Source: Octopus sinensis
Taxonomy: Eukaryota
Assembly: GCF_006345805.1 (NCBI RefSeq)
Contig: NC_043012.1
Coordinates: 16,244,001-16,308,000 of the forward strand
Direction: 5' to 3'
DNA length: 64,000 nucleotides
Under the pieces are notes generated by a model. The model did not search any database and was not told the DNA's origin. It was given only the letters and a program-made list of their open reading frames with translations. The stretch's first letter is position 1. Every line of letters starts with the position of its first letter. This document shows, one piece after another, positions 12,776 to 46,880 of this stretch. Both the position numbers and the translations under genes were made by a program.

Positions 12776-12942
12776 TATTTCTTTACTACCCACAAGGGGC
12801 TAAACATAGAGGGGACAAACAAGGGCAGACAAACGGATTAAGTCGATTACATCGACCCAGTGCGAAACTGGTACTTTAGGATGAAAGGCAAAGTCGACCT
12901 CGGCGGAATTTGAACTCAGAACGTAACGACAGACGAAATACC
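12776..12942 (-). mobile_element. 3' part of SINE interrupted by the Tx1 element
   Basis: Reverse complement GTATTTCGTCTGTCGTTACGTTCTGAGTTCAAATTCC...TTTAGCCCCTTGTGGGTAGTAAAG continues the head at 18289-18352. Confidence 0.9.
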
Positions 12943-13189
12943 AATTTCTTTATTGCCCACCGGGGGCCAAACATAGATATGGACAGTACAACTGATGGGA
13001 TCAGTGAATCGATATGATTTTACATAAATGTGACATCAAAAATAAAATACAATACATAAAAATCGAATGGAATACACAGTACAAAAACAATACAAATGAA
13101 GCGATGATCAAGTTACGCTCCGATCCCACAAGCCCCGATCTACCGCTGATACCTTTTTATTTTTCCTTTTTTTTTTTTTCCTCGTCTAT

Positions 13190-16100
13190 TCACACGGTTC
13201 CTTGCACGCACAACACTCGTGCAACATACTTCCATCTCTTTTGGAACGTACACTCTGACAGACACCTCTTCTCCAGCCACAGTTTCCTTTTCAAATGAAA
13301 AGAAAAAAGGATCGTAAATTGTCACCAGAGATAAAGTTGCCTGTCTTAATTCCTTTTATCCTAGTATTCCATACAGCCTCTTTTGCTATTGCTACAACCG
13401 TGAGAAAACAATTCTTACCTTCGTTCGTTAGAACTCCCGGTGGGTCAACTTTTATAATTGACTCAGTCGACAGCCGTACTCTTCCTTCGCCGGACAACAG
13501 ATGTTCAGCATAAGCCCACATTTCAGTTATCTCCGGACACTGAACAATAGCGTGAGGGACGGTTTCCCTGTCCCCACCGCATCTTGGACAGGTCGGCGAC
13601 TGACGTTTACCATGTCTTGCGAGCTTATCCCAAACGGGCAAGGCACCTCTGTAGCATTGCCAGGTTAAGGACTTTTGGAAGTTGTCCAACGTTCTCAACC
13701 CGAATGTACGATGAAACAAGCTGTCCAGTTGAATAAATCCGAGACCTAGAGTCGACCCCAGGCCATCGTCGCATTCAGACTCTACCAACCCACTATATAA
13801 AATCCGTGTGGAACCCCCACCGCTGGCGTTGCCCGAGCGCCGGAACAGCAAGAGGGCCTTACGGCACTCTTTATGCCACTCACTCGACCTCGGTCTACGA
13901 GAACACCAGGCTTCCTGTTCGCAAAAACTCTTGAACTCAGGGAACATTTGTCTGGCCAGCGGAGACCACACCCGTTCACTATCCAGGAGAATCCAGAGGT
14001 GCCTCAACCTCAACGCATGTCTGCGCATCATTAACCAAGGCATCCCTAAACCTCCATTTAAAGGCTTTTGACAGCAGACAGAGCGTTTCACAAGTGGCGA
14101 CCTGCCCTTCCACAAAAAGCGAAAGAGCTGTCTCTCCAACCTGATCAACCACGAATCCGGACAGGGCACGACAGTCAGGCGGTAGGTAATGACCGATGCG
14201 ATAAACACATTGGCCACTTCCGCCCTCCCTTTCAGGGATAGCCACCGCCAAGACCAAGTCTTGACTACTGCAGCCACCCTGCTCAATACCTCCGTCCAGT
14301 TCTTCTCTATCTGGAGGCCTGGTCCAAACCAGACTCCCAGCAACTTAACCGGTCCCTCCGTCCAGCGCCTAACAACACTGTCTGAAGGCATCGACTTGCC
14401 AACCCAGGTGCCGAGCTGCAAGCCGACCGACTTTTCCCGGTTAATCTTTGCTCCTGCTACCTCCTCGTAAGCCTCAATAGTCTTACCTACTTCACGTAGG
14501 CGTACCACTGTGGTTACACTGATAGTGATATCATCCGCGAAAGCCGTAACAAACTCCTCTAGTCCTGGTTCTCTCGGGATGCCACTCAACCTTTGCAGTA
14601 ATGGGTCGAGAGCCATCACATACAAAAGTGGTGAAAGCGGACATCCTTGACGAACCGAGCGTCTGATGCAGAACGGCTTCGAAAGGAAACCGTTCACCCG
14701 AACTATCGAGTCAATGTTGTGGTACAAAGCGATAAACCACCTGAGGAAGCCAAGGCCCAGGCCAAACCGCGCAAGTACAGTCGCTAGGTATCGATGGTCA
14801 ACCCTATCAAAAGCTTTAGACTGGTCCAAATGCACCAATGTCCCACCTTTGCCAGATTTATTACCAAACCTCTCTATGGTATAGCGAATAAGATGGAGGG
14901 TATCCTGAATGGTTCTGCCTGGGATGGCACATGTCTGTGCCTCCCCGACTATACCATTCGCGACACGCGCCAACCTTTTTGCTAGAACCTTGGCCAAAAT
15001 CTTCACTTCTGCGTTTAACAGAGTGATGGGCCTGAAATTCTCTAGAACGTCCCCCTTGTCCGGGTCCTTTCTGACCAACGTCACTACTCCCCGGCGCACA
15101 GATCTGGGGATAAACCCATTCTGTTTCCAGTTCGCGTACACGTCAGTCAGTAGTTGCCCGAACAAGTCTGGCATACATTTATACAGCTCGTACGGAAGAC
15201 CATCAAGTCCCGGTGACTTACCCGCTTTACAATCGGCCAAAGCCTCCATCACCTCCTCAAGTGTGATTGGCCCTTCGCAAGACTCCGCATCCGACCCCGA
15301 GAGGCACGGCAGCCCGGTAAGAAAGTCCTCGAGGGCTCTCCCACCACCAGGACCGCCGTCACCCCCGAACAGCTGGGCGAAGTACTCCCGAAAGACCTCA
15401 CACATTTTCTCGGGTTCGTTTATCAAGACACCATTTTGATTCGTCAAAGACCGAATAGAGGAACTATTTCCTTGCCGAGCTTCCACCACTCGGGCCCATC
15501 CAGCGGCTTTGATTCCTTCACTTCCTATTGCACGTAACTTAGCTCTGGTAATACTTCCCATGTGGTGGGCTTCAAGATGCTGGTTTAACTCCAGTCTTTT
15601 CACCCTCGCTTGGTCTGTATTACCAGTCCTCCAGGCTTCTTCTAGTTCCTTAACTAGACCATCTCCTATTTTACGTCCCTTCTTAGCTAAACTTATGCCA
15701 AACCTAATAGACTCATATTTGATGGCTCTTTTTAGGGCGTACCACCATTTGTTATTAATGATGGTACCTGTTAATGCCCTCTGTATTAACATCTTGATCC
15801 GCTTTCTGTACTCCTCAATCGCCAAAGGGACGTATTGAGTTTCCAGTAGCCAGATCCCTGTCTATGCAACTTATCTACCGTCAGTTTACAGGTAACCATC
15901 TTGTGGTCACTGTAGCTGACTAGAAAAAACTGTGGACACTCAACTATGGACTTATCTTTTTCTCTAATTAAAATCCTATCTAGATATGTTCTGGTAGACC
16001 CGTCACTATTTGACCACGTCCACTGTGGAGTGTTCGGGTGCTCCAACCTATATGGATCTGCTAGCTGAAATTGACTTAGCAGATCCCGAAAGCCTGTGTT

Positions 16101-16589
16101 ACATTTTCTGTTCATGTTCGAGTTTGAGCCAACACAATCTGTGTGTGCTGCACATATTGTATTAGAGTCTCCTAACACTACTAGTGAATGCGACGTGGCT
16201 AGGAACTTTCCTAGGCCACGAAAATATTCAGTTTGCGGGCCAATAATGTTTGGTGCATAAATAGCGACCAGCCTGATTGTCTTGCCACAACTGAATGTCA
16301 AGTCGAGAACGACCAGCCTGCCTTCTGGGTCAGAAAAAACCAACTTTTTCTCGGCTACCCGGTTTCTTTTTAGTAGGACCAACACCCACCCCCCACCTCC
16401 CGCCCGACTCGGAGAAACGTATTTCTCGTAGCCGTTCAGGAGGGGGAGCAGATCTCTTGGCCCCTTCACCCGGGTTTCCGTTGCAACAATTACATCCAAA
16501 TTTCTCGACCTGATGTCATTCAGAAAGCGTCCTTGCTTCCAGCTTGACAACAGGCCATGAACATTTAAACAACCAATGTGAATAGCCAT
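13190..16589 (-). CDS. T1 ORF2: APE endonuclease, reverse transcriptase and C-terminal CCHC (two frameshifts)
   Basis: EN motifs GCLNVHG, ATET, AIYAPN, GDSN, YLDRIL, SDHK. RT motifs LDQSKAFDRVDH, RQGCPLSPLLY, FADD. C-terminal CPRCGGDRETVPHAIVQC. Frameshifts at ~15825 and ~13295. Confidence 0.92.
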
Positions 16590-16600
16590 CACTTACCTGT

Positions 16601-18112
16601 TTAATTAGGATTGTCCGGTGGAGGGGGACCCTCCACCTTTTTTTTATCCAGGGTCGGAGGTGGACGGTCTTGGGAAATAGATTTGTCAAAATCCCGTCTC
16701 ACCACCGGCACAGAATTATCAGGTGGAGGGGGAATCTCCACCTTTTCCTTTTCTCGCGGGATCGGAGCTGGTAATCCAGGAAATATCGACTTGTTAAAAT
16801 CTAATCTCAATGAAGATACAGTCTTTCTGTACTTATTTTGTAGAATTCTATAAGTCTTATTTGAGACTTCATATATGTCGTAATTGATAAATCCTCTGAA
16901 AGGTTATCAATTTTTTTTACAGTCTTTATGAGTTGAATGTCTCTCATGAGCTCAGTATCTTTAGTGTATACGGCTATTATGCCTTTTTCTTCTTTTTCTC
17001 TTCTGGCAGTCTTTTTTGGTCGTTGTTCTGTAGTAGTCGCCGCTCTCGGCTGGGTTGCTGGTTGTATTTTTCTTTTGTTTGTTGTTTTTTTCTCATCTGT
17101 TCTTCTTTATCTTCTTCCTCTTTGTCTTTTTTCTCCTCTTCCTCCTCTTCTTCATTTTCTTGCAGTTCCTTCGAATGTGGCCTAATTGACCACATAAAAA
17201 ACATCGAGGTTTTCGGCCCTCAACAAACACCACGAGGTTCTCCTCCCCTACCTCAATTGTCTCAGGAATTGTTTGAATTATTTTAGGGTCCGCTTGAATG
17301 AGAAGATTAATTGTTTACCATCCCAGCGTGGGTTTTCCGTAGCGGTAGCCTGGAGGAGAGTAATTTTTTCTACCTCTTTGATTAGGACTGCCGCCAACAA
17401 CCACATAGGTTCGACCTCTGGCGGGACCCTTGTAATTTTTATTCGCGACGTCCTCATCCCCATATAATAGGGTATTAACTCCACGTCGTTCGTTTTCAAC
17501 GTTTCCACTGAGTTCTTGTGTGCTATTTCTTTATTGGTGAACCTTACTCCACCGTTCCGAATTTTTTTCCTCTTCTCAGAAATACTACGTCGCCCAATAT
17601 TGGCTTTAAGCACTTTTCTATTTTCTCTTCTGACATTCTTTCAATTTTTCTATTTTGTAGACAATATGTTTTGAAAATTATTGTTTTTGCTTTTCTTCCT
17701 GTAATAACTTTGCGGAGGTTCAATTTTCACACTGTTGTCATTTATTTCCATCATTTGCTGCTGTATTTCATAATTTCGCTTTTATTCGTCGACAGTATCT
17801 GGGTTCCACCCCCAGCAGCCAACGCAAAACTTTTTTTTCCATTTTTTGGTTCTATGTGGATGCTAGGCACATCAATTATTCTCTTCGACACAATGCCTTT
17901 GTTCTCTGGCAAAGTCGGAAACTCTTCTGGTGAAAGTTCTGACGAGCTCTCAGACACATCTCCAAAAATATCAAATATATTATCCTCTCTGCTATTCCTT
18001 CTTGTAGCGGGGGAAACCCCTATTTCCTTGTCTGTAGTTGGCTCCTCGCCGGACATGTATTTCCTCCTCTCAACAGGAGAAACAAGTATTCTGCTCCAAC
18101 GGTAGGCTCCAT
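16601..18112 (-). CDS. T1 ORF1 (RRM-like core plus CCHC knuckle), frameshifted
   Basis: Pieces 17751..18056, 17278..17613 and 16977..17204. The knuckle reads CFLCGQLGHIRRNC after a one-base correction near 17215. Confidence 0.8.
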
Positions 18113-18288
18113 GCTAGACGACATTCTTCCCCCCAAAGGGGGAATGAACAACGCGTGCTACCACAAGCACTAAGTGTTTTCAATTGAAAACTCCAACAGT
18201 TAAGTTATTCAACAGTTTAACAAGAAACAACAGTTGTTAACAATATTAACACCACGAAACAGCAATTCTTATTTCACGAACACATGTG

Positions 18289-18352
18289 CGACAGACGAAA
18301 TACCGCTAAGCATTTCGCCAGGCATGCTAACGTTTCTGGCAGCTCGCCGCCC
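18289..18352 (-). mobile_element. 5' tRNA-like head of the SINE interrupted by T1
   Basis: Reverse complement GGCGGCGAGCTGCCAGAAACGTTAGCATGCCTGGCGAAATGCTTAGCGGTATTTCGTCTGTCG. Confidence 0.9.
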
Positions 18353-19900: not shown

Positions 19901-19902
19901 CT

Positions 19903-21160: not shown

Positions 21161-21266
21161 GGAGTGGCTGTGTGGTAAGTAGCTTGCTTACGAACCACAT
21201 TGTTCCGGGTTCAATCCCACTGCGTGGCAAGTGGATTTGGTAGACGGAAACTGAAAGAAGCTCTTC

Positions 21267-21358
<92 letters not shown>

Positions 21359-21560: not shown

Positions 21561-21598
21561 GTATATATGTATATATTTATTTAAGTCTATATACATAC

Positions 21599-21629
<31 letters not shown>

Positions 21630-22167: not shown

Positions 22168-22410
22168 AAGGCGGCGAGCTGGCAGACACGTTAGCGCGCC
22201 GGGCGAAATGCTTTGTGGTATTTCGTCTGCCGTTACGTTCTGAGTTCAAATTCCACCGAGGTCGACTTTGCCTTTCATCCTTTCGGGGTCGATTAAATAA
22301 GTACCAGTTACGCACTGGGGTAGATGTAATCGACTTAATCCCTCTGTCTGTCTTTGTTTGTCCCCTCTGTGTTTAGCCCCTTCAGGGCAATAAAGAAATA
22401 AGAAATAAGA
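22168..22410 (+). mobile_element. Full-length SINE with Tx1-shared tail
   Basis: GAAGGCGGCGAGCTGGCAG...GAGTTCAAATTCC...TGTCCCCTCTGTGTTTAGCCCCTTCAGGGCAATAAAGAAATA; AAGAACAAT on both flanks (possible 9-bp TSD). Confidence 0.9.
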
Positions 22411-22670: not shown

Positions 22671-22726
<56 letters not shown>

Positions 22727-27043: not shown

Positions 27044-27373
27044 GTTTGTGTATCCGTACTTGCCCCCTACCATCGCTTGATAACCGGTGTTGGTGTGTTT
27101 ATATCGCCGTAACTTGGCGTTTCGGCAAAAGAGATCGATAAATAAGTACTAGGCTCACAAAGAATAAGTCGTGGGGTCGGCTTTTTCCACTAAAAACCGT
27201 GCTCTAGCATAAACACAGTAAACATATATACAGATATATCAGCGGCTGAACAGTCTAAGGGAAGTAACTCCCAAAATATATTTACGTGTTATCTTTCTTT
27301 AATACAATAAATTGCAACACTAATAATTTCTCGCGATGAAACGTTTAACGATATATATGTAGTGCTGGTCTGT

Positions 27374-27531
27374 GTTCAAATTCCGCCGAGGTCGACTTTG
27401 CCTTTCATCCTTTCGGGGTCGATAAATTAAGTACCAGTTACGTACTGGGGTCGATATAATCGACTTAATCCGTTTGTCTGTCCTTGTTCGTCCCCTCTGT
27501 TTTTAGCCCCTTGTGGGTAGTAAAGAAATAG
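27374..27531 (+). mobile_element. 5'-truncated SINE with Tx1-shared tail
   Basis: Ends TTAGCCCCTTGTGGGTAGTAAAGAAATAG. Confidence 0.85.
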
Positions 27532-28063: not shown

Positions 28064-28070
28064 TGTTCAA

Positions 28071-29344: not shown

Positions 29345-29360
29345 GTTCGGCAAGGAATTT

Positions 29361-31520: not shown

Positions 31521-31521
31521 T

Positions 31522-31581
<60 letters not shown>

Positions 31582-32100: not shown

Positions 32101-32328
32101 AAGGCGGCGAGCTGGCAGAAACGTTAGCACGCCGGGCGAAATGCGTAGCCGTATTTCGTCTGCCGTTACGTTCTGGGTTCAAATTCCGCCGTGGTCTACT
32201 TTGCCTTTCATCCTTTCGGGGTCGATAAATTAAGTACCAGTTACGCACTGGGGTCGATATAATTGACTAAATCCGTTTGTCTGTCCTCGTTTGTCCCCTC
32301 TGCGTTTAGCCCCTTGTGGGTAGTAAAG

Positions 32329-32333
<5 letters not shown>
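32101..32333 (+). mobile_element. Full-length SINE with Tx1-shared tail
   Basis: AAGGCGGCGAGCTGGCAGAAACG...TTTAGCCCCTTGTGGGTAGTAAAGAAATA. Confidence 0.9.
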
Positions 32334-36024: not shown

Positions 36025-36119
36025 GCGTGCAGAAATGGAATAGTCCAGATGGATAACAAAATATTAAATTAAAAGAAAAGACTATTGTCTATAAAGTATA
36101 CAATGTAGAGAAAAAAGGT
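36025..36119 (+). pseudogene. Left half of the older host ORF1 fragment
   Basis: Reads KEKTIVYKVYNVEKKG from 36072 and aligns to the RRTIKYKV / KRIIYKTYDTTKK motif of the other ORF1s. Confidence 0.65.
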
Positions 36120-37770
36120 CGCGTTTTTTCGGCTCCGTGTTTTTTACGCTCGTAAAATTCGGTAAAGAAAGAGTTGTTGTTGTTGTGGAGGTTTTGAACG
36201 GCGTTGGGGCGGTTTCGCGTTCCACTGGTTCTGCGTGTTGCACTTTTTCGGTTCGGGAGGCCGTTTTTCGGTCTGAGGCGATTATGAGCCGCCTCCATCA
36301 AGCGGAGGAGATGGAAGGGAGAAATTTCTCTGAAATTTCGACGGAAGTGTCGACATCTGAGGAGGAGTTGGCGGTGAAAAGGATGGAAGGCACCTACGCA
36401 GGTGTAACGAAGAAGTCAACGGAAAGACAGATAGACCTGGCTAAGTTGGCGGGCCTCCAGGAGTTTGTGAAGGAGGACGAGAACGGTGAAGTTGAGCTGC
36501 TGCCTCCAGTAGGGCGCGGAGACTGGTTCCATCGTAGAACCATTAAATATAAAGTATTTATGAATGGAGGTAGAAAGATGGAAGTAATTAACATGGAAGC
36601 AATTGAAGAGGCTCTCAAGCAGACAGGAGAGGAAATTGTGTACATGACAAAAGGATTACAATACGGAACCGTAACGGTGCAATTTAAAAGTGAAAAAGCA
36701 GCCAGGAATGTAGCAGCCAAGGTGGTGAGTACAGAAAAGATTTACTTGTTACCCTCGTATCTGAATAGGCGGACAACCAGAATTAGGGTGGAAGGAATAC
36801 CTCCACACCTAGAGGGCGAATTAATAACGGCTGCGGTTATAAAAGGAAATGAAGATAAAGTGGACATCCTCCACGCCATTATGAAGTATGAAGGCGTGAG
36901 AGGTGCCACACTAGTTATGAACATTCAAACGGAGGCGGATGTTATAGAGAGGATTACGGACAGCACAAAAACTGGAAATATTATTATGAGAGTGTGGGTG
37001 GAGGGTAGGGCGCCCAGGTGCTACAAGTGTGGCCAAAGGGGTCACATAAGAGCCTACTGCCCTCCCCCACCAAAGGAAAAAGAAAAGGAAAGCGTTGAGG
37101 AAACCTCAGGAGAGGAAGAAAATAAACAGAAACAAACAGAGAAGAAAACGACAGAAGAAGAGGAGATGCAACAAGAGTGGAAAGAAGGGGGAACAAAGAG
37201 AAAAAGAAAGAAAAAGAAAAACTGTGCGAAGCCCCAACCCACCCCGACACCACCCATACCCTTGGAGTCCCATCCTTCCCCTGCAAACAGTGATTCCACC
37301 CACTCCCCGCCTACAAGAAAATCAAAAACAGACACACAGAGCAAAGAAAGTCCCAAGACCCATTTTTTATGTTTATACATGGGAAAGACATACAAAACGT
37401 TAAAAAACGGGTGTTAACCAAGTGGTACGAACACGAAGATTGTAGCTACACGGCTGTGGATAGTGATGATACGGGTATATTGGTGAGAAGGTTTGAGGAA
37501 GAGGGTGTGTGTGGAAGTCAGTGGAAATGAAAGATGAATGGATAGAGATGGCTAAAAGAAAAACGAATGTTGTGATAGGAAAAAAAGGAATACTAATTGG
37601 AAATGGGTGAAGAAGGATAGATAAGTGATGCTGGCGGATGGGGCCGTCGGTATCACTCTCATATACCATTTTCATATTCCATTTTGCTCATATATATGTA
37701 ATTGTGATGTTCTATGTCCCCAATGTTTGTAATGTCCCCTCTATGTAGCCCCTAGTGGGTAATAAAAAAA
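36120..37770 (+). mobile_element. ORF1-only element A
   Basis: 5'UTR, ORF1, short 3'UTR and tail TGTCCCCTCTATGTAGCCCCTAGTGGGTAATAAAAAAA. Confidence 0.88.
36284..37417 (+). CDS. ORF1 of A (377 aa; probably longer if a homopolymer frameshift near 37405 is corrected)
   Basis: YGTVTVQF, LLPSYLNRRTTRIRVEGIPP, CYKCGQRGHIRAYC (CX2CX4HX4C) and a K/E-rich linker. Confidence 0.85.
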   Translation: MSRLHQAEEMEGRNFSEISTEVSTSEEELAVKRMEGTYAGVTKKSTERQIDLAKLAGLQEFVKEDENGEVELLPPVGRGDWFHRRTIKYKVFMNGGRKMEVINMEAIEEALKQTGEEIVYMTKGLQYGTVTVQFKSEKAARNVAAKVVSTEKIYLLPSYLNRRTTRIRVEGIPPHLEGELITAAVIKGNEDKVDILHAIMKYEGVRGATLVMNIQTEADVIERITDSTKTGNIIMRVWVEGRAPRCYKCGQRGHIRAYCPPPPKEKEKESVEETSGEEENKQKQTEKKTTEEEEMQQEWKEGGTKRKRKKKKNCAKPQPTPTPPIPLESHPSPANSDSTHSPPTRKSKTDTQSKESPKTHFLCLYMGKTYKTLKNGC

Positions 37771-39445
37771 TACGCGTTTTTTTGCGCTCTGTAAAATTCG
37801 GTTAAAAAAGAAAAACAACAAAAAGTGAATTGTGGTTGCGGAATTGGAACGTCGGTTGGTGCGGTTTCGCGTCGCACTGGTTCTGTGCGTCGCACGTTTT
37901 CTGTTCGGGAGGCCGTTTTTCGGTCTGAGGCGACTATGAGCCGCCTCTACCAAACGGATGAGATGGAAGGGAGAAATTTCTCTGAAAATTCGTCGACATC
38001 TGAGGAGGAGTTGGCGGTGAAAAAAATGGAAAGCACTATGCAGGTATAACGAAGAAGTCAACAGAAAAAGAGATAGACCTGGCTAAGTTGACGGACTTCC
38101 AGGAGTTCATGAAGGAGGAGGAGAACGGAGAGGTTGAGCTGTTGCCTCTAGCAGGGCGCGGAGACTGGTTCCATCGTAGAACCATTAAATATAAAGTATT
38201 TATGAATGGAGGTAGAAAAATGGAAGTGATTAACATGGAAGCAATTGAAGAGGCTTTCAAACGGACAGGAGAAGAAATTGTGTACATGACAAAAGGATTA
38301 GAATATGGAACCATAACGGTACAATTTAAAAGTGAGAAAGCAGCCAGGAATATAGCAGCCAAGGTGGTGAGTACAGAAAAGTTTTACTTGTTCCCCTCGT
38401 ATTTGAATAGAAGGACCACCAGAATTAGGGTGGAAGGAATACCTCCACACCTAGAGGGCGAATTAATAACGGCTGCGGTTATCAAAGGAAATGAAGATAA
38501 AGTGGACATCCTCCACGCCATTATGAAATATGAAGGCGTGAGAGGTGCCACACTAGTAATGAACATACAGACGGAGACGGAAGTTATAGAAAAGCTTACG
38601 GACAGTATAAAAACTGGAAATATTATTATGAGAGTGTGGGTGGAGGGTAGGGCGCCCAGGTGCTACAAGTGTGGCATGAGGGGTCACATAAGAGCCTACT
38701 GTCCTCCACCACTAAAGGAAAAAGAAAAGGAAATCGTCGCGGAAGCCCCAAAAGAGGAAGAAACCAAAGAGAACCAAAGGGAAAAAGAAACGACAGAAGA
38801 AGAGGAGATGCAACAAGAGTGGAAAGAAGGAAGAAAAATGAGAAAAAGAAAGAAAAAGAAAAACTGTGCGAAGCCCCAACCCACCCCAACACCACCCGCA
38901 CCCTCTCAATCCCACCCTTCCCCTGCAGACAGTGAACCCACCCGCTCCCCTCCAACAAGAAAACAAAAGAAAAATAACAATACAGACAGACAAGAGTTTG
39001 AAAACGAACCCAGGCCGAACATTTATATTGTGACTGAACAGAAAGAGGTTGAAAGGGTAATGGAGGAGTATGAATGGTATGAAATGGATGGGACCAGATA
39101 TGCAGTGCTGGAAAAGAAGAATATAGATGAGTTTGTGTTGAGGTGTGAAAGGGAGAATTGGGAGGTGAAAGATACAAGAATGAGCGATGAATTCGTGGAA
39201 TATATGGAGGACAGTTTCGGAGTAAGAATGGATATGGATGGTCTTCGTATTGGGAATGAACATTCAGGTGACAGTGAAAACAAAAGGACAGGTAAGTGAT
39301 GCTGGCGGAGGGGGCCGTTAGCATCGCTTTCATATTATCATTTTTTCATTTTCATTTGCTCATAAATTTAATCATATTGTTCTATGTCCTCCATGTTTTG
39401 TTAGGTCCGCCATTCTTCGTAGCCTCTGGTGGGTAATAAAGAAAT
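37771..39445 (+). mobile_element. ORF1-only element B (close relative of A)
   Basis: 5'UTR and ORF1 core are near-identical to A. Tail GTAGCCTCTGGTGGGTAATAAAGAAAT. Confidence 0.88.
37936..39299 (+). CDS. ORF1 of B (one frameshift near 38035)
   Basis: ORFs 37825..38049 and 38088..39299; CYKCGMRGHIRAYC. Confidence 0.85.
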
Positions 39446-39652
39446 AACATGGAGGAAATCAATTTTTTGCGTTATTAGTAAGTTGATATATTTTTGCTCT
39501 CGTACTATTATCTCTGTTATTATATACTGTTGGTCTATCTGTTTTGGAAGTCAGCCTTCGTGCGAAGACTTCGCGTTGGTGTTCTCCCTCCGTGGGGGAA
39601 AACTACAATTAATTTGGATTTACCAAAGGCTTGTTAAAGCCATTTGTTCAAG

Positions 39653-41040
39653 ATGGAGTCCCCCATCTCTTATTCGCCCGTGACGAGCGAGGATGAATAC
39701 CCGGCGTTGTCGCCAAGAAAAAAAGAGGCGTTGTCGCCAAGAAAAAAAGAGGCGTTGTCGCCGAAGAAAAAAGAGGCGGCGTCGCCCAAGAAAATGGAAA
39801 AACCAGTACCAGCATCAACTCCAGCAAAAAAATTCGCTGAAGTGGCTGGGAAAAAGATCAAAAAAATAAATATAGAAAATTTTGGAAAATTTGCAGACTG
39901 TGTAAAAAAAGAAGGCACAGAAGTGACTGTGGCCACAAACATACAAATACATGACGATATAGAAAAAAAAAGAATAATATATAAAACTTACGACACAACG
40001 AAAAAAATGATCCAAAAAATCGAAGAAAAAAAAATAGAGTTTTGTCTAAAACCTTTTATGGATAAAATAACGTATATAAACAGAGGAAAAAGATACGGCA
40101 CAGTGGAGGTGCGTTTTACTACGGAGGAGATAGCGAAGAAACTATCGATGGAGCCGATCAAAGCGGAAAACATTGTCTTACTACCATTGTATAAAGGAAA
40201 AAGGACGTCGAAAATTTCAATGAACAACATACCGCCAGAGGCAGATGCTGAATGTCTGGTGGCAGCAGTGATGGTAGGTCTGGAGGAAAAAATAAACATC
40301 CTCCAGGCCACAGTGGAGGAAGAGGAGTTTGGAAAGGGCAGAAAATAGTGATAGCCATTCAGGCGGAGGTGCAAACACTGGAAGAAATTCCAGAAACGGT
40401 AAAGATTAGTGAAGACGAGAAAAAAACAGTTTTCGTGGAGGGCAGGAAGCCGAGGTGCTTCGGCTGCGGCAGAAGGGTCATGTAAGGGCGGAATGCCAAC
40501 CCCAACCCAAACCGCAGGAAGCACCTAAGCCAAAAGAAAAAGAAGATAATGTGTCACCAGAAGCAGCGTCGGACGGCCCAGAAGGGAAGACTGAAGGTGT
40601 GGAGGGACGGTGACAGCAGAACCAGCGGCGGAGGAAAAAAAAAAAAGAGCGAGGAAAAGATAAATGAGGAGGGGTGGGCAAAAATTACCGGAAAAAAAAA
40701 AGAAAAACGGAAACCACCCCTCCCAGAGTAATTTTAAAAAGAAAAAAGAGTCAATGAACTCGTATATGGCCGTAAAGGCAGCAAATAGCAGACTCGGAAA
40801 CGCGTTGGCAGCCATGGCCAAAGTGGAGAAAGTAGTGAAAGAAAACGACTTTGTAATTTACAGAATAGGCCGGAAGGATTACGGGCGGATAAAGTCAGAA
40901 TTCTTCCATGACGTAGGCCCACTTAGATTGGATGTGACATCTCCACATATATTCGAGGGCCTACGTCAGACTCCCCCACGAGGCCCAGAAAAAGAGGTAG
41001 AAGAACAAGAGAAAACCGAACCACTGATATAAGGTAAGTA
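39653..41040 (+). CDS. ORF1 of C, frameshifted
   Basis: YGTVEVRF, LLPLYKGKRTSK, VEGRKPRCFGCG; N-terminal SPRKKE repeats. Confidence 0.8.
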
Positions 41041-44000
41041 ATGGATTACATTTATGTTGGTTGTTTGAATGTGCGCGGCCTGGGAGCAGGCTGGAAGCAA
41101 GGTCGCTTCCTGCATGATATCAGGTCGCGTAATTTAGATGTTATTGTTGCTACAGAAACCGGTTAGAGGGGCCAAGAGGTCTACTCCCGCTGTTTGACGG
41201 CTACGAGAGTTTTTTCTCTCCTGGCAGTCCTACAGGCGGGAGTGGGGTGTTGGTCCTATTAAAAAGAAACCGGGTTTCTGAGAAAAAGTTAATTTTTGCA
41301 GATCCAGAAGGTAGGCTGGTCGTCATGGATTTGACGTTCAGTAATGGTAAAGTTATCAGACTGGTTGCAATTTACGCACCCAACCATACAGGGCAAAGTG
41401 ATTATTTTCGTGAACTAGAAAACTTTCTTGGTACTTCGCATTCATTAGTGGTGCTAGGAGACTTTAACACAATTTGCAAAGCGGATGTAGATTGTGTTGG
41501 CTCGCGTCCAGATAGAAAAGGCAACAGTGGCTTCATGGAACTGCTAAGCCGCTTTGAGCTAGCAGATCCTTATAGGCTGGAATTTCCGAACGCTCCATTG
41601 TGGACATGGTCAAACAGCGACGGATCTTCCAGGTCATATTTAGATAGAATACTAATTAGAAAAGTAGACAGTAAAATAGCTAAGTGTCCACAGTTTTACC
41701 CGATCAGCTACAGTGATCATAAAATGGTCACTTGTAAGCTTGACATAGATAAGGTTAAAAATAGAGGATCCGGTTACTGGAAACTTAATACGTCCCTTTT
41801 GGCGATTAAGGAGTACAAGACCGGATTAGGAATATAATTCAGAGGGCACTATCTGGTACCATCATTAATAACAAATGGTGGTACGCCCTCAAACGAGCCA
41901 TCAAGTTTGAGTCTATTAGATATAGCATAGGAGTAGTGGCTAGAGAGGCTAGAAGGGAAACTACTCTAGTTAAGGAATTAGAGGAAGCCATGAAAACTGG
42001 CTCTGCGGCTCAGGTGGCGTCCAAGAGACTGGTGTTAAACCAGCACCTCGAGGCCAAACACATGGGCTGCATTGTCAGGGCTAGAATCCGCCATATGGGA
42101 TGTGAAGGAATCAACGCCGTGAGATGGGTCCGAGTGGTGGAAGCTCGGCATGGTAACGATGCCACGATTCGATCTTTGACGAACCAACAAGGTGAGTTGA
42201 TAAACGAACCCGAGGAGATGTGTGAGGCCTTTCAGGAGCACTTCGCTCAGCTTTTCGGTGAGTGCGGCGGACTGGATACGAGGAGGGCCTTTACGGACCT
42301 ACTCGACGGTCTGCCGCGCTTATCGGGGCGAGATGCGGAGGGCTGTGAAGGGCCAATCACGCCTGGGGAGGTGTTTGAGGCAATGGCGGACTGCGGCGCG
42401 GGCAAGGCGCCGGGTTTGGATGGTCTACCCTATGAGTTATATAGAGTATGCCAGACTTGTTCGGGCACCTACTGGCGGAGGTCTATGCGAACTGGCAGCA
42501 GAACGGGCTTATACCCAGATCTGTGCGCCGGGGAGTAGTGACTCTCGTCAGAAAGGACCCGAGCAAGGGGGAGTGCATTGATAATTTCAGGCCCATCACT
42601 CTGCTAAACACAGAGTTGAAGATTTTGGCCAAAGTGTTATCGAAAAGATTGGCGCGTGTCGCGGATGGTCTGATCGGAGAGGCACAGACATGTGCCGTTC
42701 CGGGCAGATCCATTCAGGATAATCTCCATCTAATGCGGTACACTATAGAGGGGTTTAATAGTGATTCTGGCAAGGGTGGGGCACTGGTCCATTTAGACCA
42801 ATCTAAAGCTTTTGATAGGGTCGACCATCGTTACCTGGTGTCTGCCCTGGCACAGTTCGGGCTGAGCCTTGGCTTCCTCAGGTGGATTATCCAAATTATG
42901 ATAACATCGACTCGGTAGTTCGGGTGAACGGCTTCTTGTCGAAGCCGTTCAAAATCAAACGCTCGGTTCGTCAAGGGTGTCCGCTCTCCCCGCTTTTGTA
43001 CGTGATGGCTCTTGAGCCATTACTGCGAAAACTGAGCGGCATCCCGAGACAGCCAGGTAATGGAAAATCAGTGTCAGCGTACGCGGATGACATCACCATC
43101 ATCGTAACCGAAATGGACCACCTATGTAAAGTAGGCAAGGCCATAGAGGTTTACGAGACGGTGACAGGACCAAAAGTTAATCGCGAAAAGTCAGTCGGCT
43201 TGCAACTCGGCACCTGGAGAGGCAAGTCGATGCCTCCTGACAGCGTCGTGGGACGTTGGACGGAGGGTCCGATTAAACTGCTAGGGGTCTGGTTCGGTCC
43301 AGACCTCCAAATAGAGAAGAATTGGGGCGAGGTAACGAGCAAGGTGGCTGCAGTAGCCAAGACCTGGTCTTGGCGGTGGCTATCCCTGAAAGGGAGGGCG
43401 GAGGTGGCCAATGTGTTTATCGCATCGGTTATCACCTACCGCCTTTCCGTCGTTCCTTGCCCTGATTTGGTGGTTGATCAAGTTGGAAAGACAGCTCTTC
43501 TACTTCTTGTGGAAGGGCGGGAAACCACTTGTGAAACGCTCTACTTGCTGTCAACAACCGTTAAAGGGTGGGCTAGGGATACCTTGGCTGATGATGCGCA
43601 GACATGCGCTGAGGTTAAGACATCTGTGGCTCTACCTGGATGGTGAACGGGTGTGGTCTTCGCTAGCAAAACTGATGTTTCCCAAGTTCACTAGTTTCGG
43701 TGGATGGGAAACCTGGCTGAATCGTAGATCGAAACTTGGCACTTGGTACACGGAGTGTCGCAAGGCTCTCCTGCTATTCGTCGCTCGGGCAACGCCTGCG
43801 GTGGGGGTTCCACCACATTCTTCTATAGAGGGTTGGTAGAGGCGGATGTGAAGATACCTTGGGGGAAACCCTAGGTCTCGACGATAATCAGCTGGCCAGT
43901 CTGTTCCGACGTACGTTCGAGCCGAGGACACTGGACAACTTCCAGAAGTCTCTGGCATGGCAATGCTACAGAGGAGCTCTACCTGTTCGGGATAAACTCG

Positions 44001-44420
44001 CAAGGCACGGTGGCCAAGACAGTCCGATATGTCCAAGATGCGGGCGGGATAGGGAAACCGTCCCGCACGCTATTGTTCATTGTCCGGACGTGTCTGAGGT
44101 GTGGGTTTATGCCGAACAGCTGTTGTCAGGTACACGAAGAGTACAGCTGTCGACTGAGTCGATTACAAAAATTGACCCACCGGATTTCCTCGTGAATGAA
44201 GGTAAGTTTCGTTTTCTCGTTGTAGTAGCAATTGCGAAAGAGGTGATATGGAAGACGAGAATGAAAGGTGTACAGTCAGGCAAGTTCATCTCCGGCCCTG
44301 GTTTGATGAAGTATTTCATCTTTCACCTGAAAAGGAAGATAGGGCTGGAGAGAATATGCCTGACTAGGAGAGTGTATGAAGAACGATGAAAGGATGTAGC
44401 ACGAAAGTTGCGAGTGAAAG
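41041..44420 (+). CDS. ORF2 of C (APE endonuclease plus RT), multiple frameshifts
   Basis: GCLNVRG, GDFN, SDHK, LDQSKAFDRVDH, RQGCPLSP, YADD, CPRCGRDRETVPHAIVHC; clearly paralogous to T1 ORF2. Confidence 0.9.
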
Positions 44421-44689
44421 ATACAACATAAATGTAATACCAAGCGCAACCAAAAGTATCAGTGGGGAGGCGGGGCTCGTGGGGTCCGAGCTAAACCCGC
44501 ACCCACTCCACCCGTAATGTCTTCCGGTCTGTCCCATCATTCGATTTCTGTCCATTTATTGTAATTCATGAAAATTTTTAAATTCGATTTATCGTAAAAA
44601 ACCATTCGTGTGTCTGACCCCATCATCAGATTGTATTGTCCCATCTATGTTCGCCCCTTGTGGGTAATAATAAAACAATATGGAGGAAA

Positions 44690-46597
44690 TCTATCCACGT
44701 GTGTTGTGAGTTATTTTGTATGTGAAAATTGGAAAAAAAACTGTTAAAAATTGTCAAAAAATTGAATCGCGCGAGGCGTTTGCCGCTACGTGTTTGAACC
44801 TTTTATAGAAGGTGTGTCGACCCTCAAGTCATGGAGACTTACGCGGAGGTCGCCACAACAAAAAGTGACGAGTCTCTTAGAATAAAAGAGTGTTCTTTAG
44901 AAAAGAACAATTGAAGGAATACGAGAAGTTCGTCAAAAGGGAGGGTGACAGCGTGAAGCTGGTCCCGCCTGTGAAACAATAAGAGAAAGAAAAATAACAA
45001 GACGATAACGTATAGAACGCAAGATAGAAACACGAGAAAACTGGTGAGAGTGACGATTGAAGAAATAGAGAAATGTCTGGGGGACATCATGAAAAAAGCG
45101 ACTTTTGTAGACAGAGGAAAGAATATGGTACGGTGGAGGTGAGATGCGCAACAAAGGAAGTGGCGGCCTCATTGGCTTCCACTGTCCTGAAAGCGGAAAA
45201 TTTCACCATGTGGCCGACGTATAAAGGAAGACGAGGGGTACGGGTAAGAGTCCCAAAGGTGCCCCCAGATATTAAAGCAGAAATGCTGGTAACAGCCATT
45301 ATTGGGGCAGCAAAAGAGGAAGTAGAAATAGGGTCAATTAAGGAGACGAACGTTGTAAATTGGAAGGGATTCGGAGTAGAGTTGTGGTTGATTGCCACAA
45401 TGGAAGACATCGAAAGATTTCCCTTCCAAATAGAAATAGAAAACGAGAAAACAATTAGTGTAATAGTGGAAGGCAGAAAACCGAATTGCTACCTGTGCGG
45501 ATCAAGAGGGCACATAAAAAAGGAATGTCCGCTGTATGAATTCACAGCGGAGCAAAAAGAGACACAAAGTGGAGAGAAGGAAAACGAACACGAAGGAAAG
45601 AACAGCGAAAACAAGGAAAAGGAAATAACGGAGAAACAACAAGAGAAGGGAAGTAACAGCGCACTGAAAGAAAATGAAAACAAAGGGAAGATAGTAGAAA
45701 AGGAGCAAAATTCACAGGGTGCAGAAGTAGTGGAGAAGGAGCCAAGGCAGAAGCAAGAGAAAGAAAAGGAAAGTACATTAAAGGAAAGAGAAAAAGCAGG
45801 AAAAGAACAAGAGAAGGAACAGAACCAAGAGAAAGGAAAAGATGGTATGCAAAAAGGAAAAGAAACAACAGGAAAGGAACTTAAGGCACAGGGTAGAGAG
45901 ACGGCAGACAAAGAGCCAAAAAGACAAGAGAAGGAAAAAGAAAGAAGAGAAAGCAAAAAGAGAGAAAGAGAGAAACCGAGGGAGGAGAAAAAAGAGGAAG
46001 TAAGTCCTAAGAGAAAAACCAGAGAAAACGTAGGTACGAATAGAAAATTCAAATACTATGGAACGTTGATCCATCACAGGCACTGTGAGGAGATGGAAGA
46101 TTTAATAAACGTAACAAATGGATATACGTGGGTCAGGATGGGCACCGAATGGAAAGAAACAGGTGCACTCGTCCACGAGAAAGACGCCGAGGCGTTCATC
46201 GAGGCAGCTGGCAAGAACGTGTCAAAACATATGAAATGCCGACTTACAAGGTTGCCACGAACGATGGAATTTTACTCAGATTTGGTAGAGATAATGGAGT
46301 ATATATAAAAGAAAAGGTATTGTGAAAACTTAATTTGGAAATGATAAAAAGAACTTTAAATTCTGAAAAAAAAAAAAGAAATGTTGAACTTTGTAAAACT
46401 TTTGAAATGTATGTTGAAAATGTATAAAATGTTTTATTTGGAAAATATTGTTGACGAATAAAAAACAAATGACGAAATGTAACCGCTCGATTTCGGGGAT
46501 CGAGTGGGCATTACACCACATTGTACAAACTTCATAATTCATTATTCATTTTCCCGATTGTATTGTCCCATCTATGTAGCCCCTAGTGGGTAATAAT
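44690..46597 (+). mobile_element. ORF1-only element D
   Basis: ORF1 ~44830-46308 (YGTVEVRC, CYLCGSRGHIKKEC, long K/E-rich linker), 3'UTR and tail TTGTCCCATCTATGTAGCCCCTAGTGGGTAATAA. Confidence 0.88.
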
Positions 46598-46880
46598 AAA
46601 ACAATATGGAGGAAAGCACCTTCGAAAAGTGTCTTGGTGCAACTATGAAAGGTATATAATCAGAGGTGGTAAATTCGCCACCATAGAAGCAATGTTCGAG
46701 TCAACGGAGCGTGCAAGGGAGTATTTTATTTTTACCTTTATATCTGGGACGTAGGACGTCCCGGAAAAAAATTTAAAATGCCCCTCCCCCAGAAGTAGAG
46801 GTAGGCTGGATTGTAGCCACACTTCTATACAAGAGGGAGGACAAGATACAATTGATCGAAATTACAAGAGACGGGCTAAC
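46598..46880 (+). pseudogene. Right half of the older host ORF1 fragment
   Basis: With frameshifts reads NNMEESTFEKCLGATMKG.YIIRGGKFATIEAMF...LPLYLGRRTSR...PPEVEVGWIVATLL..REDKIQLIEIT. Confidence 0.75.

What the first reader, a model, noticed from the sequence alone, without database searches (positions are those of the whole stretch)
12776..46600. One 3' tail shared by autonomous Tx1 elements, ORF1-only elements and a tRNA-derived SINE: a three-tier retrotransposon system
Seen (minus-strand tails written as reverse complements): T1 12943 TGTCCATATCTATGTTTGGCCCCCGGTGGGCAATAAAG; C 44636 TGTCCCATCTATGTTCGCCCCTTGTGGGTAATAA; A 37733 TGTCCCCTCTATGTAGCCCCTAGTGGGTAATAAA; D 46564 TGTCCCATCTATGTAGCCCCTAGTGGGTAATAA; similar tails on B, E1 and E2. 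SINE copies at 12776, 22168, 27374 and 32101 end TGTCCCCTCTRYGTTTAGCCCCTTGTGGGTAGTAAAG or a close variant. Most can form a GCCC-loop-GGGY stem just before AATAAA/AGTAAA. Established: SINEs share 3' tails with 'stringent' partner LINEs (L2, CR1, RTE), whereas L1-type elements usually rely on poly(A). Inference: this Tx1-group RT recognises a specific stem-loop and mobilises both a coding (ORF1-only) and a non-coding (SINE) parasite. I know of no description of such a trio, but cannot check Repbase or Dfam.
Basis: partly seen in the sequence, partly recalled or inferred. Interest (0 to 1): 0.88.

Follow-up and report, generated by a model that had tools for sequence, protein, structure and literature searches.

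The report
Octopus LINE, ORF1-only and SINE share tail
In this stretch of octopus DNA, three kinds of jumping element (full-length L1/Tx1-type LINEs, shortened copies that keep only the first gene, and a short non-coding SINE) end in the same about 45-base tail with a small conserved RNA hairpin, so all three probably use one reverse transcriptase; this is a new example of a known kind of parasite-on-parasite relationship.

Summary
A covariance model finds exactly 11 copies of the tail in the window: 2 full-length LINEs (T1, C), 5 ORF1-bearing shortened elements (A, B, D, E1 and a new one, F) and 4 SINEs. There are no orphan tails. A model trained only on Argonauta and metagenome tails recovers 10 of the 11; nine rank above the first non-tail hit. 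Similarity between the classes is confined to the last about 44 nt (76-77% identity, against 50-60% further upstream and 54% for shuffled tails).

The 4-bp stem with a CTTGT-type pentaloop shows compensatory changes: GCCC/GGGY in Octopus, GGCC/GGCY in Argonauta, NGGC/GCCN' in relatives with 40% ORF2 identity. In Argonauta the SINE and LINE tails changed together.

No copy has poly(A), and the elements have 15-18 bp target-site duplications (TSDs). An ORF1-only element in O. sinensis is flanked by a TSD, and ORF1 has dN/dS 0.33.

ORF2 is of the L1 superfamily. Its Tx1 placement could not be tested against reference sequences. The tRNA origin of the SINE was not confirmed. "E2" is T1's own ORF1.

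Each component has precedent: stringent LINE-SINE pairs, and HAL1/HeT-A-type ORF1-only elements. I found no published Tx1-SINE tail pair. Verdict: a new member of a known kind, of moderate interest.

The parts
12943..18288 (-). T1: full-length L1/Tx1-type LINE (5.35 kb). It has a 5'UTR, a broken ORF1 (about 16980-18056, RRM-like plus CCHC), ORF2 EN 15786-16592, ORF2 RT plus zf-RVT 13291-15825 (one frameshift between them), a 3'UTR and the tail at 12944-12987. The 16-bp TSD GGTATTTCGTCTGTCG lies at 12927-12942 and 18289-18304.
   Evidence: Pfam Exo_endo_phos, RVT_1 and zf-RVT; PDB best hit human L1 ORF2p at E 2e-46; sequence; tblastn map.
12777..12942 (-). 3' part of a SINE that T1 split. Its head is at 18289-18354(-). 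The perfect 15-bp TSD ATATATAATCACGGA lies at 12762-12776 and 18355-18369. The tail is at 12777-12820.
   Evidence: R1 hit at 56.1 bits.
22168..22399 (+). Full-length SINE (232 bp). Its tail carries GCCC-CTTCA-GGGC and AATAAAGAAAT, followed by AAGAAAT repeats up to about 22413.
27369..27529 (+). 5'-truncated SINE copy with the tail.
32101..32332 (+). Full-length SINE inserted in a (TA)n microsatellite. The hairpin is at 32309-32321 (GCCC cttgt GGGT).
28069..29344 (-). F: a degenerate ORF1-derived non-autonomous element (CCHC knuckle at about 28771) with a tail at 28069-28112. It lies head-to-tail directly behind E1. The possible TSD is 29345-29360 against 28048-28062 (12 of 16 identical).
29361..31522 (-). 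E1: an internally deleted LINE. It keeps ORF1 (RRM-like plus CCHC), the last ~100 codons of ORF2 (..YREALPVRDKF..), the 3'UTR and the tail (29361-29404).
   Evidence: (match to the ORF2 3' ends of C and L002).
36117..37771 (+). A: an ORF1-only element (1.65 kb). Its ORF runs 36137-37417, the C-terminal part is frameshifted relative to B, there is no ORF2 remnant, and the tail is at 37728-37771.
37772..39445 (+). B: an ORF1-only element about 90% identical to A. Its ORF runs 38088-39299 and the tail is at 39402-39445. It joins A's tail directly.
39446..44676 (+). C: a full-length LINE (5.2 kb) with several frameshifts. ORF1 is at 39644-41032, EN at about 41050-41837, RT at 41816-44389 and the tail at 44634-44676. 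It is preceded by the 15-mer AACATGGAGGAAATC (39446-39460).
   Evidence: (inverted-repeat matches to T1 at 73-85%).
44677..46602 (+). D: an ORF1-only element (1.9 kb). Its ORF runs 45073-46308 and the tail is at 46559-46602, nearly identical to C's tail. It is preceded by AATATGGAGGAAATC (44677-44691).
46603..46890 (+). G: a fragment of an older ORF1 (RRM region). It starts with AATATGGAGGAAAGC (46603-46617), which is the third copy of the 15-mer and therefore the original target of the D and C insertions.

Best explanation
The window is octopod DNA (its SINE copies are up to 93% identical to ones in Octopus sinensis). It carries one retrotransposon 'guild' built around an L1-superfamily, Tx1-type LINE.

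The LINE encodes ORF1 (RRM-like plus CCHC knuckle) and ORF2 (APE endonuclease, RT, C-terminal zinc finger). Its RNA ends in a ~45-nt module: a TGTCC-rich box, a 4-bp G/C stem closed by a CUUGU-type pentaloop, then AAUAAAGAAAU.

Inferred mechanism: ORF2p binds this hairpin (the 'stringent' mode, as in UnaL2, R2, SART1 and maize LINE1-1_ZM). It starts target-primed reverse transcription at the ...GAAAU end rather than on a poly(A) tail. That would explain why every genomic copy ends there, why no copy has poly(A), and why the copies have 15-18 bp TSDs.

Two kinds of non-autonomous element carry the same module and so use the same ORF2p:
(1) ORF1-bearing deletion derivatives (A, B, D, E1, F). These still make their own ORF1 protein, which is under purifying selection.
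(2) A ~232-bp Pol III-type SINE that carries this tail as one of at least three alternative tails on the same head and body.

Shown: the shared tail, its restriction to the 3' end, stem covariation, SINE/LINE tail co-evolution between genera, TSDs, absence of poly(A), and the L1-superfamily ORF2.

Inferred: that ORF2p recognises the hairpin, that it acts in trans, and that the clade is Tx1.
For: - Tail census: 11 window hits, all on the three classes, with no orphans. Independent model R2 finds 10 of the 11.
- Between-class identity is 76-77% in the last 44 nt, against 50-60% in the two preceding 44-nt blocks and 54% for shuffled tails. ORF1 proteins of the same elements are only 30-38% identical.
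- Hairpin: 94.4% of cells are paired against 73.1% in shuffles (0 of 500 reach it). Three of four pairs show double changes. The covariation score is 0.553 against 0.184. Slid controls give 13-46%.
- RNAalifold predicts only this hairpin; pair 2 is GC in 10 sequences and CG in 9.
- Argonauta SINE tails (CGGCCCTTGTGGCTAATAGAGAAAT) match the Argonauta LINE tail (CGGCCCTTGTGGCTAATAAAGAAAT). Octopus SINE and LINE tails both have GCCC/GGGY.
- The hairpin persists in relatives with 40% ORF2 identity: AGGC-cttgt-GCCT, TGGC-catgt-GCCA, CGGC-tatat-GCCG.
- TSDs: T1 16 bp, the split SINE 15 bp, the O. sinensis ORF1-only element ~18 bp.
- E1 keeps an ORF2 C-terminal remnant, which shows origin by internal deletion.
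- dN/dS for A against B ORF1 is 0.33.
- ORF2 matches L1 ORF2p at E 2e-46, against R2 at 4e-21. Pfam finds EN, RT and zf-RVT.
- AAUAAA is kept in all Pol II-type tails but mostly lost in SINE tails (AGTAAA, AATAGA) while the hairpin is kept.
Against: - There is no experiment. Recognition by ORF2p is inferred from analogy with stringent LINEs.
- Single tails do not fold more stably than shuffled sequences (z from -1.3 to +0.5 for nine of the ten tails folded; F is the exception at -2.8). MFE structures of A, B, C and D use an alternative pairing of the TGTCCC box with GGGTA.
- The stem has only 4 bp. The hairpins of the distant relatives were picked by eye, so there is selection bias.
- Some copies have a broken stem (C·A at pair 3 in F, in the O. 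sinensis ORF1-only element and in one SINE).
- The sample is small: 64 kb plus about 45 kb of two other octopods.
- Neither full-length LINE in the window is intact.
- ORF1-only elements A, B and D share no 5'UTR with T1 or C, so their exact autonomous partner was not seen.
Confidence: 0.72

Rival explanations
1. The conserved hairpin plus AAUAAA is a transcript 3'-end-formation or stability signal, not an RT recognition element. The classes share it because they descend from one LINE, not because they compete for one RT.
For: AATAAA directly follows the hairpin in every LINE and ORF1-bearing copy. ORF1-only elements clearly descend from LINEs by deletion (E1).
Against: The SINE, presumably Pol III-transcribed, keeps the hairpin while losing the AAUAAA hexamer (AGTAAA in 4 of 6 Octopus copies, AATAGA in Argonauta). 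The SINE head and body are unrelated to the LINE and occur with other tails, so the tail was acquired rather than inherited. All copies end precisely 5-8 nt after the hexamer with no poly(A), so cDNA synthesis starts at a defined internal point.
Confidence: 0.12
2. The ORF1-only and SINE copies are not independently mobile. They are dead deletion products, or chimeras made locally by recombination or template switching next to LINE 3' ends.
For: A, B, C, D (plus fragment G) and E1-F lie in head-to-tail arrays. A joins B without a TSD.
Against: A TSD-flanked 1.6-kb ORF1-only element with the same architecture sits in a different species and locus (L003 9459-11054). A and B are about 90% identical with dN/dS 0.33. 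SINE copies with the same body-tail junction occur at four dispersed window sites with their own TSDs, and also in O. sinensis and Argonauta.
Confidence: 0.05
3. The SINE is mobilised by a different LINE clade present in octopus (CR1, RTE or Dong-R4) whose tail merely resembles this one.
For: The same SINE head and body carry at least two other tails (..AAAATTTGAAACCA, and ..GGCCTTGTGCC..ATTATTATTG), so other partners exist for sister subfamilies.
Against: In the roughly 170 kb searched, the tail is found only on L1/Tx1-type ORF2 or ORF1 elements and on the SINE. The tails co-vary with the Tx1-type LINE tail of the same genus. No CR1 or RTE 3' end with this motif was seen, but those clades were not sampled systematically.
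Confidence: 0.08

Closest known systems
Stringent-type LINE/SINE pairs with a shared 3' stem-loop: UnaL2/UnaSINE1 (eel), CR1/tortoise Pol III SINE, Bov-B/Bov-tA, and within the L1 clade maize LINE1-1_ZM/ZmSINE2-3 and Chlamydomonas L1-1_CR/SINEX-3_CR (PMC3472496; PMC3747384 Table 1)
   Same: The SINE 3' end is homologous to the LINE 3' end only. There is a short hairpin with compensatory changes and a conserved loop. The elements end in a short repeat rather than relying on poly(A). Both partners have TSDs.
   Different: The partner here is an animal L1-superfamily, Tx1-type element. The 58-pair survey lists no Tx1, no animal L1-clade and no mollusc pair. The stem is very short (4 bp) and lies directly before AAUAAA.
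SINEU / Tx1-Mar in crocodilians (Kojima 2015, PMC4494074)
   Same: It is the only published case I found of a SINE attributed to Tx1-clade machinery.
   Different: That link rests on shared target preference (Mariner-N4_AMi) and on poly(A) tails, not on a shared 3' tail. Here the link is a shared tail, and insertion sites are varied.
ORF1-only non-autonomous LINEs: HAL1 (L1 clade), HeT-A (Jockey), Ag-Sponge (CR1) (PMC5786205)
   Same: They encode only an ORF1 homologue, keep the LINE 3' end and are amplified as units. ORF1 is under constraint.
   Different: These come from the Tx1-type lineage, use a specific tail rather than poly(A) (unlike HAL1), and show no 5'UTR similarity to the full-length LINEs in the window.
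Mammalian L1 + HAL1 + Alu/B1 guild
   Same: It has the same three tiers: an autonomous LINE, an ORF1-only derivative and a SINE, all dependent on one ORF2p.
   Different: The mammalian tiers are linked by poly(A) (relaxed recognition). Here they are linked by a sequence- and structure-specific tail.

Membership tests
Stringent LINE-SINE partnership (shared 3' tail) | SINE 3' end homologous to the LINE 3' end, with the homology confined to the end | tested here: met
   76-77% identity in the last 44 nt between classes, against 50-60% upstream and 54% for shuffles. BLAST of the SINE against A's tail gives E 2e-6.
Stringent LINE-SINE partnership (shared 3' tail) | Conserved stem-loop supported by compensatory changes | tested here: met
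   94.4% of cells paired, 3 of 4 pairs with double changes, 0 of 500 shuffles reach the score, and the slid controls are low.
Stringent LINE-SINE partnership (shared 3' tail) | Copies end at a defined sequence or short repeat, not at poly(A) | tested here: met
   All 28 tails end in ..AAAGAAAT or a near variant. (AAGAAAT)n follows the SINE at 22399 and (ATT)n follows the L004 tail.
Stringent LINE-SINE partnership (shared 3' tail) | SINE and LINE tails co-evolve within a host lineage | tested here: met
   Octopus has GCCC/GGGY in both; Argonauta has GGCC/GGCT in both.
Stringent LINE-SINE partnership (shared 3' tail) | Retrotransposition depends on the tail (assay) | not testable with these tools
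   This needs a cell-based retrotransposition assay.
Tx1 clade of the L1 superfamily | ORF2 with an N-terminal APE endonuclease, an RT and a C-terminal zinc finger, with L1 ORF2p as the closest solved relative | tested here: met
   Pfam Exo_endo_phos, RVT_1 and zf-RVT. 8c8j/8sxt L1 ORF2p at E 2e-46, against R2 at 4e-21.
Tx1 clade of the L1 superfamily | Type I ORF1 (RRM plus CCHC knuckle), as described for Tx1-type animal L1s (PMC5203782) | tested here: inconclusive
   zf-CCHC is found by Pfam in A (19.3 bits, just under the curated cut-off of 20.8) and D. The RRM is inferred only from the motif pattern (..YGTVEVRF..), with no Pfam or PDB hit.
Tx1 clade of the L1 superfamily | RT phylogeny groups with Tx1 reference elements (RTclass1/Repbase) | not testable with these tools
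   No Tx1 reference sequences are available here. Indirect support: L1-Tx1 is the only L1-type superfamily listed among the recently active LINE superfamilies of O. vulgaris (PMC13282606).
Tx1 clade of the L1 superfamily | Target-sequence-specific insertion | tested here: inconclusive
   T1, the SINEs and the O. sinensis ORF1-only element lie in unrelated sites. However, D and C reused one 15-bp site, F inserted right behind E1's tail, and the distant relatives form tandem arrays.
ORF1-only non-autonomous LINE (HAL1/HeT-A type) | Encodes an ORF1 homologue, lacks ORF2 and keeps the LINE 3' end | tested here: met
   tblastn finds ORF1 hits only in A, B, D and F. E1 also keeps an ORF2 C-terminal remnant.
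ORF1-only non-autonomous LINE (HAL1/HeT-A type) | Amplified as a unit (TSDs, several copies) with ORF1 under constraint | tested here: met
   L003 9459-11054 with the TSD CAGAAA[C/T]GTTAGCACGCCG. A and B have dN/dS 0.33.
ORF1-only non-autonomous LINE (HAL1/HeT-A type) | Shares the 5' end with its autonomous partner (the 'bipartite' definition) | tested here: not met
   No 5'UTR similarity between A, B or D and T1 or C. The true parent subfamily may simply be absent from the window.
tRNA-derived SINE | Head recognisable as a tRNA, with A and B boxes | tested here: inconclusive
   ARAGORN finds nothing even at 80% thresholds. Rfam finds no tRNA hit at E<=10. A B-box-like GGTTCAAATTCC is present, and the A box matches only partly. 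ARAGORN also missed the second SINE family (19107), whose head looks tRNA-like by eye, so this negative result is weak.

The most novel reading that the evidence does not exclude
An animal L1-superfamily (Tx1-type) lineage uses stringent, hairpin-specific template recognition. The signal is a 4-bp stem with a CUUGU pentaloop that has been kept from Octopus and Argonauta out to relatives with only 40% ORF2 identity. This lineage would be the so far unidentified partner behind part of the octopus-specific SINE expansion, while also supporting a long-lived lineage of ORF1-only 'half-LINEs'. The same machinery tends to re-insert immediately behind existing tails, which builds head-to-tail arrays.
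Probability: 0.45. Interest if true: 0.62.

Novelty: new member of a known kind. Interest (0 to 1): 0.5.

Why it matters
SINEs make up about 11-12% of Octopus genomes, and most families are still 'unclassified' with no named LINE partner (PMC13282606). Their expansion has been highlighted as an octopus-specific genomic feature.

Tying one abundant SINE family to a Tx1-type LINE through a co-evolving tail names a driver for part of that expansion. It also adds the Tx1/L1 group in animals to the list of 'stringent' LINEs. This bears on the proposal that poly(A)-only recognition in mammalian and plant L1 is a derived relaxation (PMC3472496).

The 4-bp stem and pentaloop form a compact element that can be mutated, which suits tests of how an L1-type ORF2p selects its template. 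Two parasites share the tail, one with and one without its own ORF1. That gives a natural comparison for what ORF1p contributes in cis.

Tried and rejected
- tRNA origin of the SINE head. ARAGORN at default and relaxed thresholds, and Rfam in gathering and E-value modes, gave nothing. I left this as inconclusive.
- Thermodynamic support for the hairpin. Single tails are not more stable than shuffles, so I rejected this as evidence and relied on covariation.
- Alternative long-range pairing of TGTCCC with GGGTA. It appears in the MFE folds of A, B, C and D, but it is not kept in Argonauta and RNAalifold does not choose it.
- AAYATGGAGGAAA as the native 5' terminus of C- and D-type elements. I rejected this because the third copy is in-frame ORF1 coding sequence of fragment G (M-E-E-S-T-F-E-K-C-L), and the sequences diverge immediately after the 15-mer. 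A reused TSD fits better.
- Strict site specificity for the whole family. I rejected this because T1, the SINEs and the O. sinensis element lie in unrelated targets.
- 'E2' as a separate ORF1-only element. It is T1's own ORF1.
- Naming the clade through database names. The best homologues are unnamed or 'hypothetical protein' (Argonauta hians, O. sinensis). I ran no further search on this.
- Target repeat around the array. The flanks of A and D have no other copy in the window or the loci.
- L010/L011. About 45 nt beyond AATAAA are conserved between the two loci. It was not resolved whether this is the element's end or a target.

Full report
WHAT IS IN THE WINDOW

The sequence is AT-rich, full of TA/CA microsatellites, and dense with retroposons.
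- The best homologues of the large reverse-transcriptase ORF are from Argonauta hians and an unnamed NCBI assembly (58% identity).
- The only database homologue of the ORF1 protein is an Octopus sinensis protein.
- The SINE copies are up to 93% identical to copies in O. sinensis chromosome CM016880.
So the window is octopod DNA, probably Octopus or a close relative.

CHECK OF THE OBSERVATION

- The core 14-mer occurs 8 times against 1.55 expected.
- A covariance model built from 23 octopod tails finds exactly 11 hits in the 64 kb. Four are on SINE copies (ending at 12777-, 22399+, 27529+, 32332+). Two are on full-length LINEs (T1 12944-, C 44676+). Five are on ORF1-bearing shortened elements (A 37771+, B 39445+, D 46602+, E1 29361-, and a new one, F 28069-). 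There are no orphan tails.
- That model was trained partly on window sequences, so I built a second one from Argonauta and metagenome tails only. With filters off it still recovers 10 of the 11. Nine of them rank above the first non-tail hit at E=0.15, D falls below it at E=0.28, and only the degenerate F is missed.
- Pairwise identity between classes is 76-77% over the last 44 nt. It falls to 50-60% in the two preceding 44-nt blocks, and shuffled tails give 54%.
- ORF1 proteins of the same elements are only 30-38% identical. The tail is therefore far better conserved than anything else these elements share.

- The 'SINE at 12776' is the 3' part of a complete SINE that T1 split. The SINE head is at 18289-18354(-). 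T1 is flanked by a perfect 16-bp TSD (GGTATTTCGTCTGTCG), and the SINE by a perfect 15-bp TSD (ATATATAATCACGGA).
- The ORF at 17278-17613 is T1's own broken ORF1, not a separate element.
- E1 still has the last ~100 codons of ORF2 behind its ORF1. It is a snapshot of how ORF1-only elements arise by internal deletion.

THE ELEMENTS

T1 (5.35 kb) and C (5.2 kb) each have a 5'UTR, an ORF1 with an RRM-like segment and a CCHC knuckle, and an ORF2 with APE endonuclease, RT and the zf-RVT finger. Each then has a 285-350-nt 3'UTR. Both are damaged.
- ORF2 matches human L1 ORF2p over about 600 residues at E 2e-46, against 4e-21 for R2. It therefore belongs to the L1 superfamily.
- I could not place it in Tx1 by phylogeny, because no Tx1 reference sequence is reachable here.
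- Indirect support for Tx1 comes from two papers. L1-Tx1 is the only L1-type superfamily listed among the recently active LINE superfamilies of O. vulgaris (PMC13282606). RRM+CCHC 'type I' ORF1 in animals is described as characteristic of Tx1-type elements (PMC5203782).

A and B (about 1.65 kb, about 90% identical) and D (1.9 kb) have ORF1 and a 3'UTR but no trace of ORF2.
- In O. sinensis, an element with the same architecture (L003 9459-11054) sits inside a SINE head. It is flanked by an ~18-bp TSD. These units therefore transpose as such.
- A against B gives dN/dS = 0.33 over 300 codons. Part of their divergence therefore happened under selection for a working ORF1 protein.

The SINE is about 232 bp, with a B-box-like GGTTCAAATTCC.
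- ARAGORN and Rfam do not recognise a tRNA in it, so 'tRNA-derived' remains unverified.
- The same head and body also occur with two other tails. One ends ..AAAATTTGAAACCA (window 11816-11982-, 47722-47864-). The other ends ..GGCCTTGTGCC..ATTATTATTG (L003).
- The Tx1-type tail is thus one of several modules this SINE has acquired, which is the usual mosaic pattern.

THE HAIRPIN

Single tails are not more stable than shuffled sequence (z from -1.3 to +0.5 for nine of the ten tails folded; F is the exception at -2.8). Several MFE folds prefer another pairing. The case rests on comparison between species.
- In Octopus the stem is GCCC/GGGY. In Argonauta it is GGCC/GGCT or GGCC/GGCC. In a metagenome contig with 60% ORF2 identity it is GGCC/GGCC.
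- In relatives with about 40% ORF2 identity it is AGGC/GCCT, TGGC/GCCA or CGGC/GCCG. The loop is mostly CTTGT throughout.
- On 31 hairpin-centred sequences, 94.4% of cells pair against 73.1% in shuffles (0 of 500). Three of four pairs show changes on both sides. The covariation score is 0.553 against 0.184. Sliding the partner strand drops pairing to 13-46%.
- RNAalifold, given only the 23 octopod tails, predicts this hairpin and nothing else. Its second pair is split GC:10 and CG:9.
- Caveat: I located the hairpins of the distant relatives by eye. The Octopus/Argonauta/L004 comparison does not depend on that.

The most telling point is co-evolution. In the 22-kb Argonauta locus, the SINE copies carry CGGCCCTTGTGGCTAATAGAGAAAT and the LINE carries CGGCCCTTGTGGCTAATAAAGAAAT. 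These SINE copies share the body with the Octopus SINE. In Octopus both have the GCCC/GGGY version.

HOW IT MOST LIKELY WORKS

- None of the 28 tails examined is followed by poly(A). They stop 5-8 nt after the AATAAA hexamer at ..GAAAT, sometimes followed by (AAGAAAT)n or (ATT)n.
- For Pol II transcripts, this means cDNA synthesis begins at a defined internal point. That is the behaviour of 'stringent' LINEs, whose RT binds a 3' stem-loop.
- The SINE mostly lost the hexamer (AGTAAA, AATAGA) but kept the hairpin. This argues that the hairpin, not the poly(A) signal, is what matters for mobilisation.
- I therefore take the hairpin-plus-GAAAU module as the recognition and initiation site of the Tx1-type ORF2p. 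ORF1-only elements borrow it while supplying their own ORF1p. The SINE borrows it and supplies nothing. This step is inference, and no experiment exists.

COMPARISON WITH WHAT IS KNOWN

- Shared-tail LINE/SINE pairs are classical. A survey of 58 pairs lists L1-clade examples only from maize and Chlamydomonas. It lists none from Tx1, none from animal L1 lineages and none from molluscs (PMC3747384; PMC3472496).
- The one published SINE-Tx1 link (SINEU/Tx1-Mar) rests on shared targets and poly(A) (PMC4494074).
- ORF1-only LINE derivatives are known from three other clades: HAL1, HeT-A and Ag-Sponge (PMC5786205).
- Mammalian L1 + HAL1 + Alu is a functional analogue of the 'trio', but it is linked by poly(A).
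- Searches for an octopus SINE partner found nothing. Repbase and Dfam could not be consulted.
- I therefore class this as a new member of a known kind, not a new kind.

SIDE FINDING: THE ARRAYS

- A-B-C-D-(G) on the + strand and E1-F on the - strand are head-to-tail arrays.
- After the tails of B, C and D comes the same 15-mer: AACATGGAGGAAATC, AATATGGAGGAAATC and AATATGGAGGAAAGC. The third copy is in-frame coding sequence of an older ORF1 fragment, G.
- The simplest reading is that D, and then C, inserted at the same nick directly behind B's tail. Each insertion duplicated the same 15 bp.
- F likewise sits directly behind E1's tail, with a 12/16 TSD-like repeat.
- In Argonauta, a 5'-truncated LINE 3' end follows a full LINE tail.
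- The 40%-identity relatives occur as regular ORF1-ORF2 tandem arrays.
- Re-insertion next to existing tails may reflect priming on DNA complementary to the tail. This was not tested.

Noticed in passing
window 39446-39460, 44677-44691, 46603-46617; also 29345-29360 vs 28048-28062: The same 15-bp sequence (AAYATGGAGGAAAKC) follows the tails of B, C and D, and its third copy is coding sequence of an older ORF1 fragment (G). D and then C seem to have inserted at one identical spot directly behind an existing tail, reusing the same TSD. F sits the same way behind E1. This produces the head-to-tail arrays A-B-C-D-G and E1-F.
   Followed up: partly
L006/L007 and L008/L009 (ENA contigs ctg14421c, ctg88761c): Relatives with about 40% ORF2 identity occur as regular tandem arrays of ORF1-ORF2-ORF1-ORF2 with a period of about 6.5-6.8 kb. 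The contig names end in 'c' (possibly circular assemblies), so this could be a true array or an assembly artefact.
   Followed up: no
window 11816-11982(-), 47722-47864(-); L003 11056-11265, 11271-11490, about 11800-11920: The same SINE head and body occur with two other 3' tails (..AAAATTTGAAACCA, and ..GGCCTTGTGCC..AAGATTATTATTG). This points to tail swapping and to further LINE partners. The second alternative tail again contains a GGC-CTTGT-GCC hairpin.
   Followed up: partly
SINE tails: window 12777-12790, 27516-27529, 32319-32332; L001 SINE copies: The AATAAA hexamer is kept in all LINE and ORF1-bearing tails. In most SINE tails it is changed to AGTAAA (Octopus) or AATAGA (Argonauta), as expected if the SINE is not a Pol II transcript.
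   Followed up: partly
window 19107-19307(+), 21160-21560(+), 26024-26224(+), 26800-26987(-): A second, unrelated SINE family whose head looks tRNA-like by eye (..GGCTGTGTGGTAAG....GGTTCAATCCCACTGCGTGGCA), usually followed by microsatellites. It has no Tx1-type tail.
   Followed up: no
window 23132-24875(-): Fragmented ORFs with reverse-transcriptase motifs (..LLFADDAAFVAHT..) from a different, non-L1-like LINE. It was not classified.
   Followed up: no
window 1149-1628(-) and about 4438, 6862, 9310(-): Another ORF1-like (RRM region) fragment lies at 1149-1628. A near-identical ~80-nt segment recurs three times at about 2.4-kb spacing, which suggests a long tandem repeat in the first 10 kb.
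   Followed up: no
window 34277-34712(+): Four tandem copies of a 108-bp unit (81-92% identical).
   Followed up: no
L010 about 6725-6770 and L011 about 6640-6690: About 45 nt downstream of the AATAAA of two distant LINE relatives are conserved between the two loci (TTTGGAG.G.GTGCA..TGTGC.CAC..CAAATA) before the flanks diverge. In L010 a Ty3-like pol gene follows. This could be the true element end or a specific target.
   Followed up: partly
window 22158-22175 vs 22407-22424: The SINE at 22168 has a TSD-like repeat that runs into its own first bases (GAACAATTGAAGGCG against GAACAATCAAGGCG). This looks like microhomology at the 5' junction.
   Followed up: no
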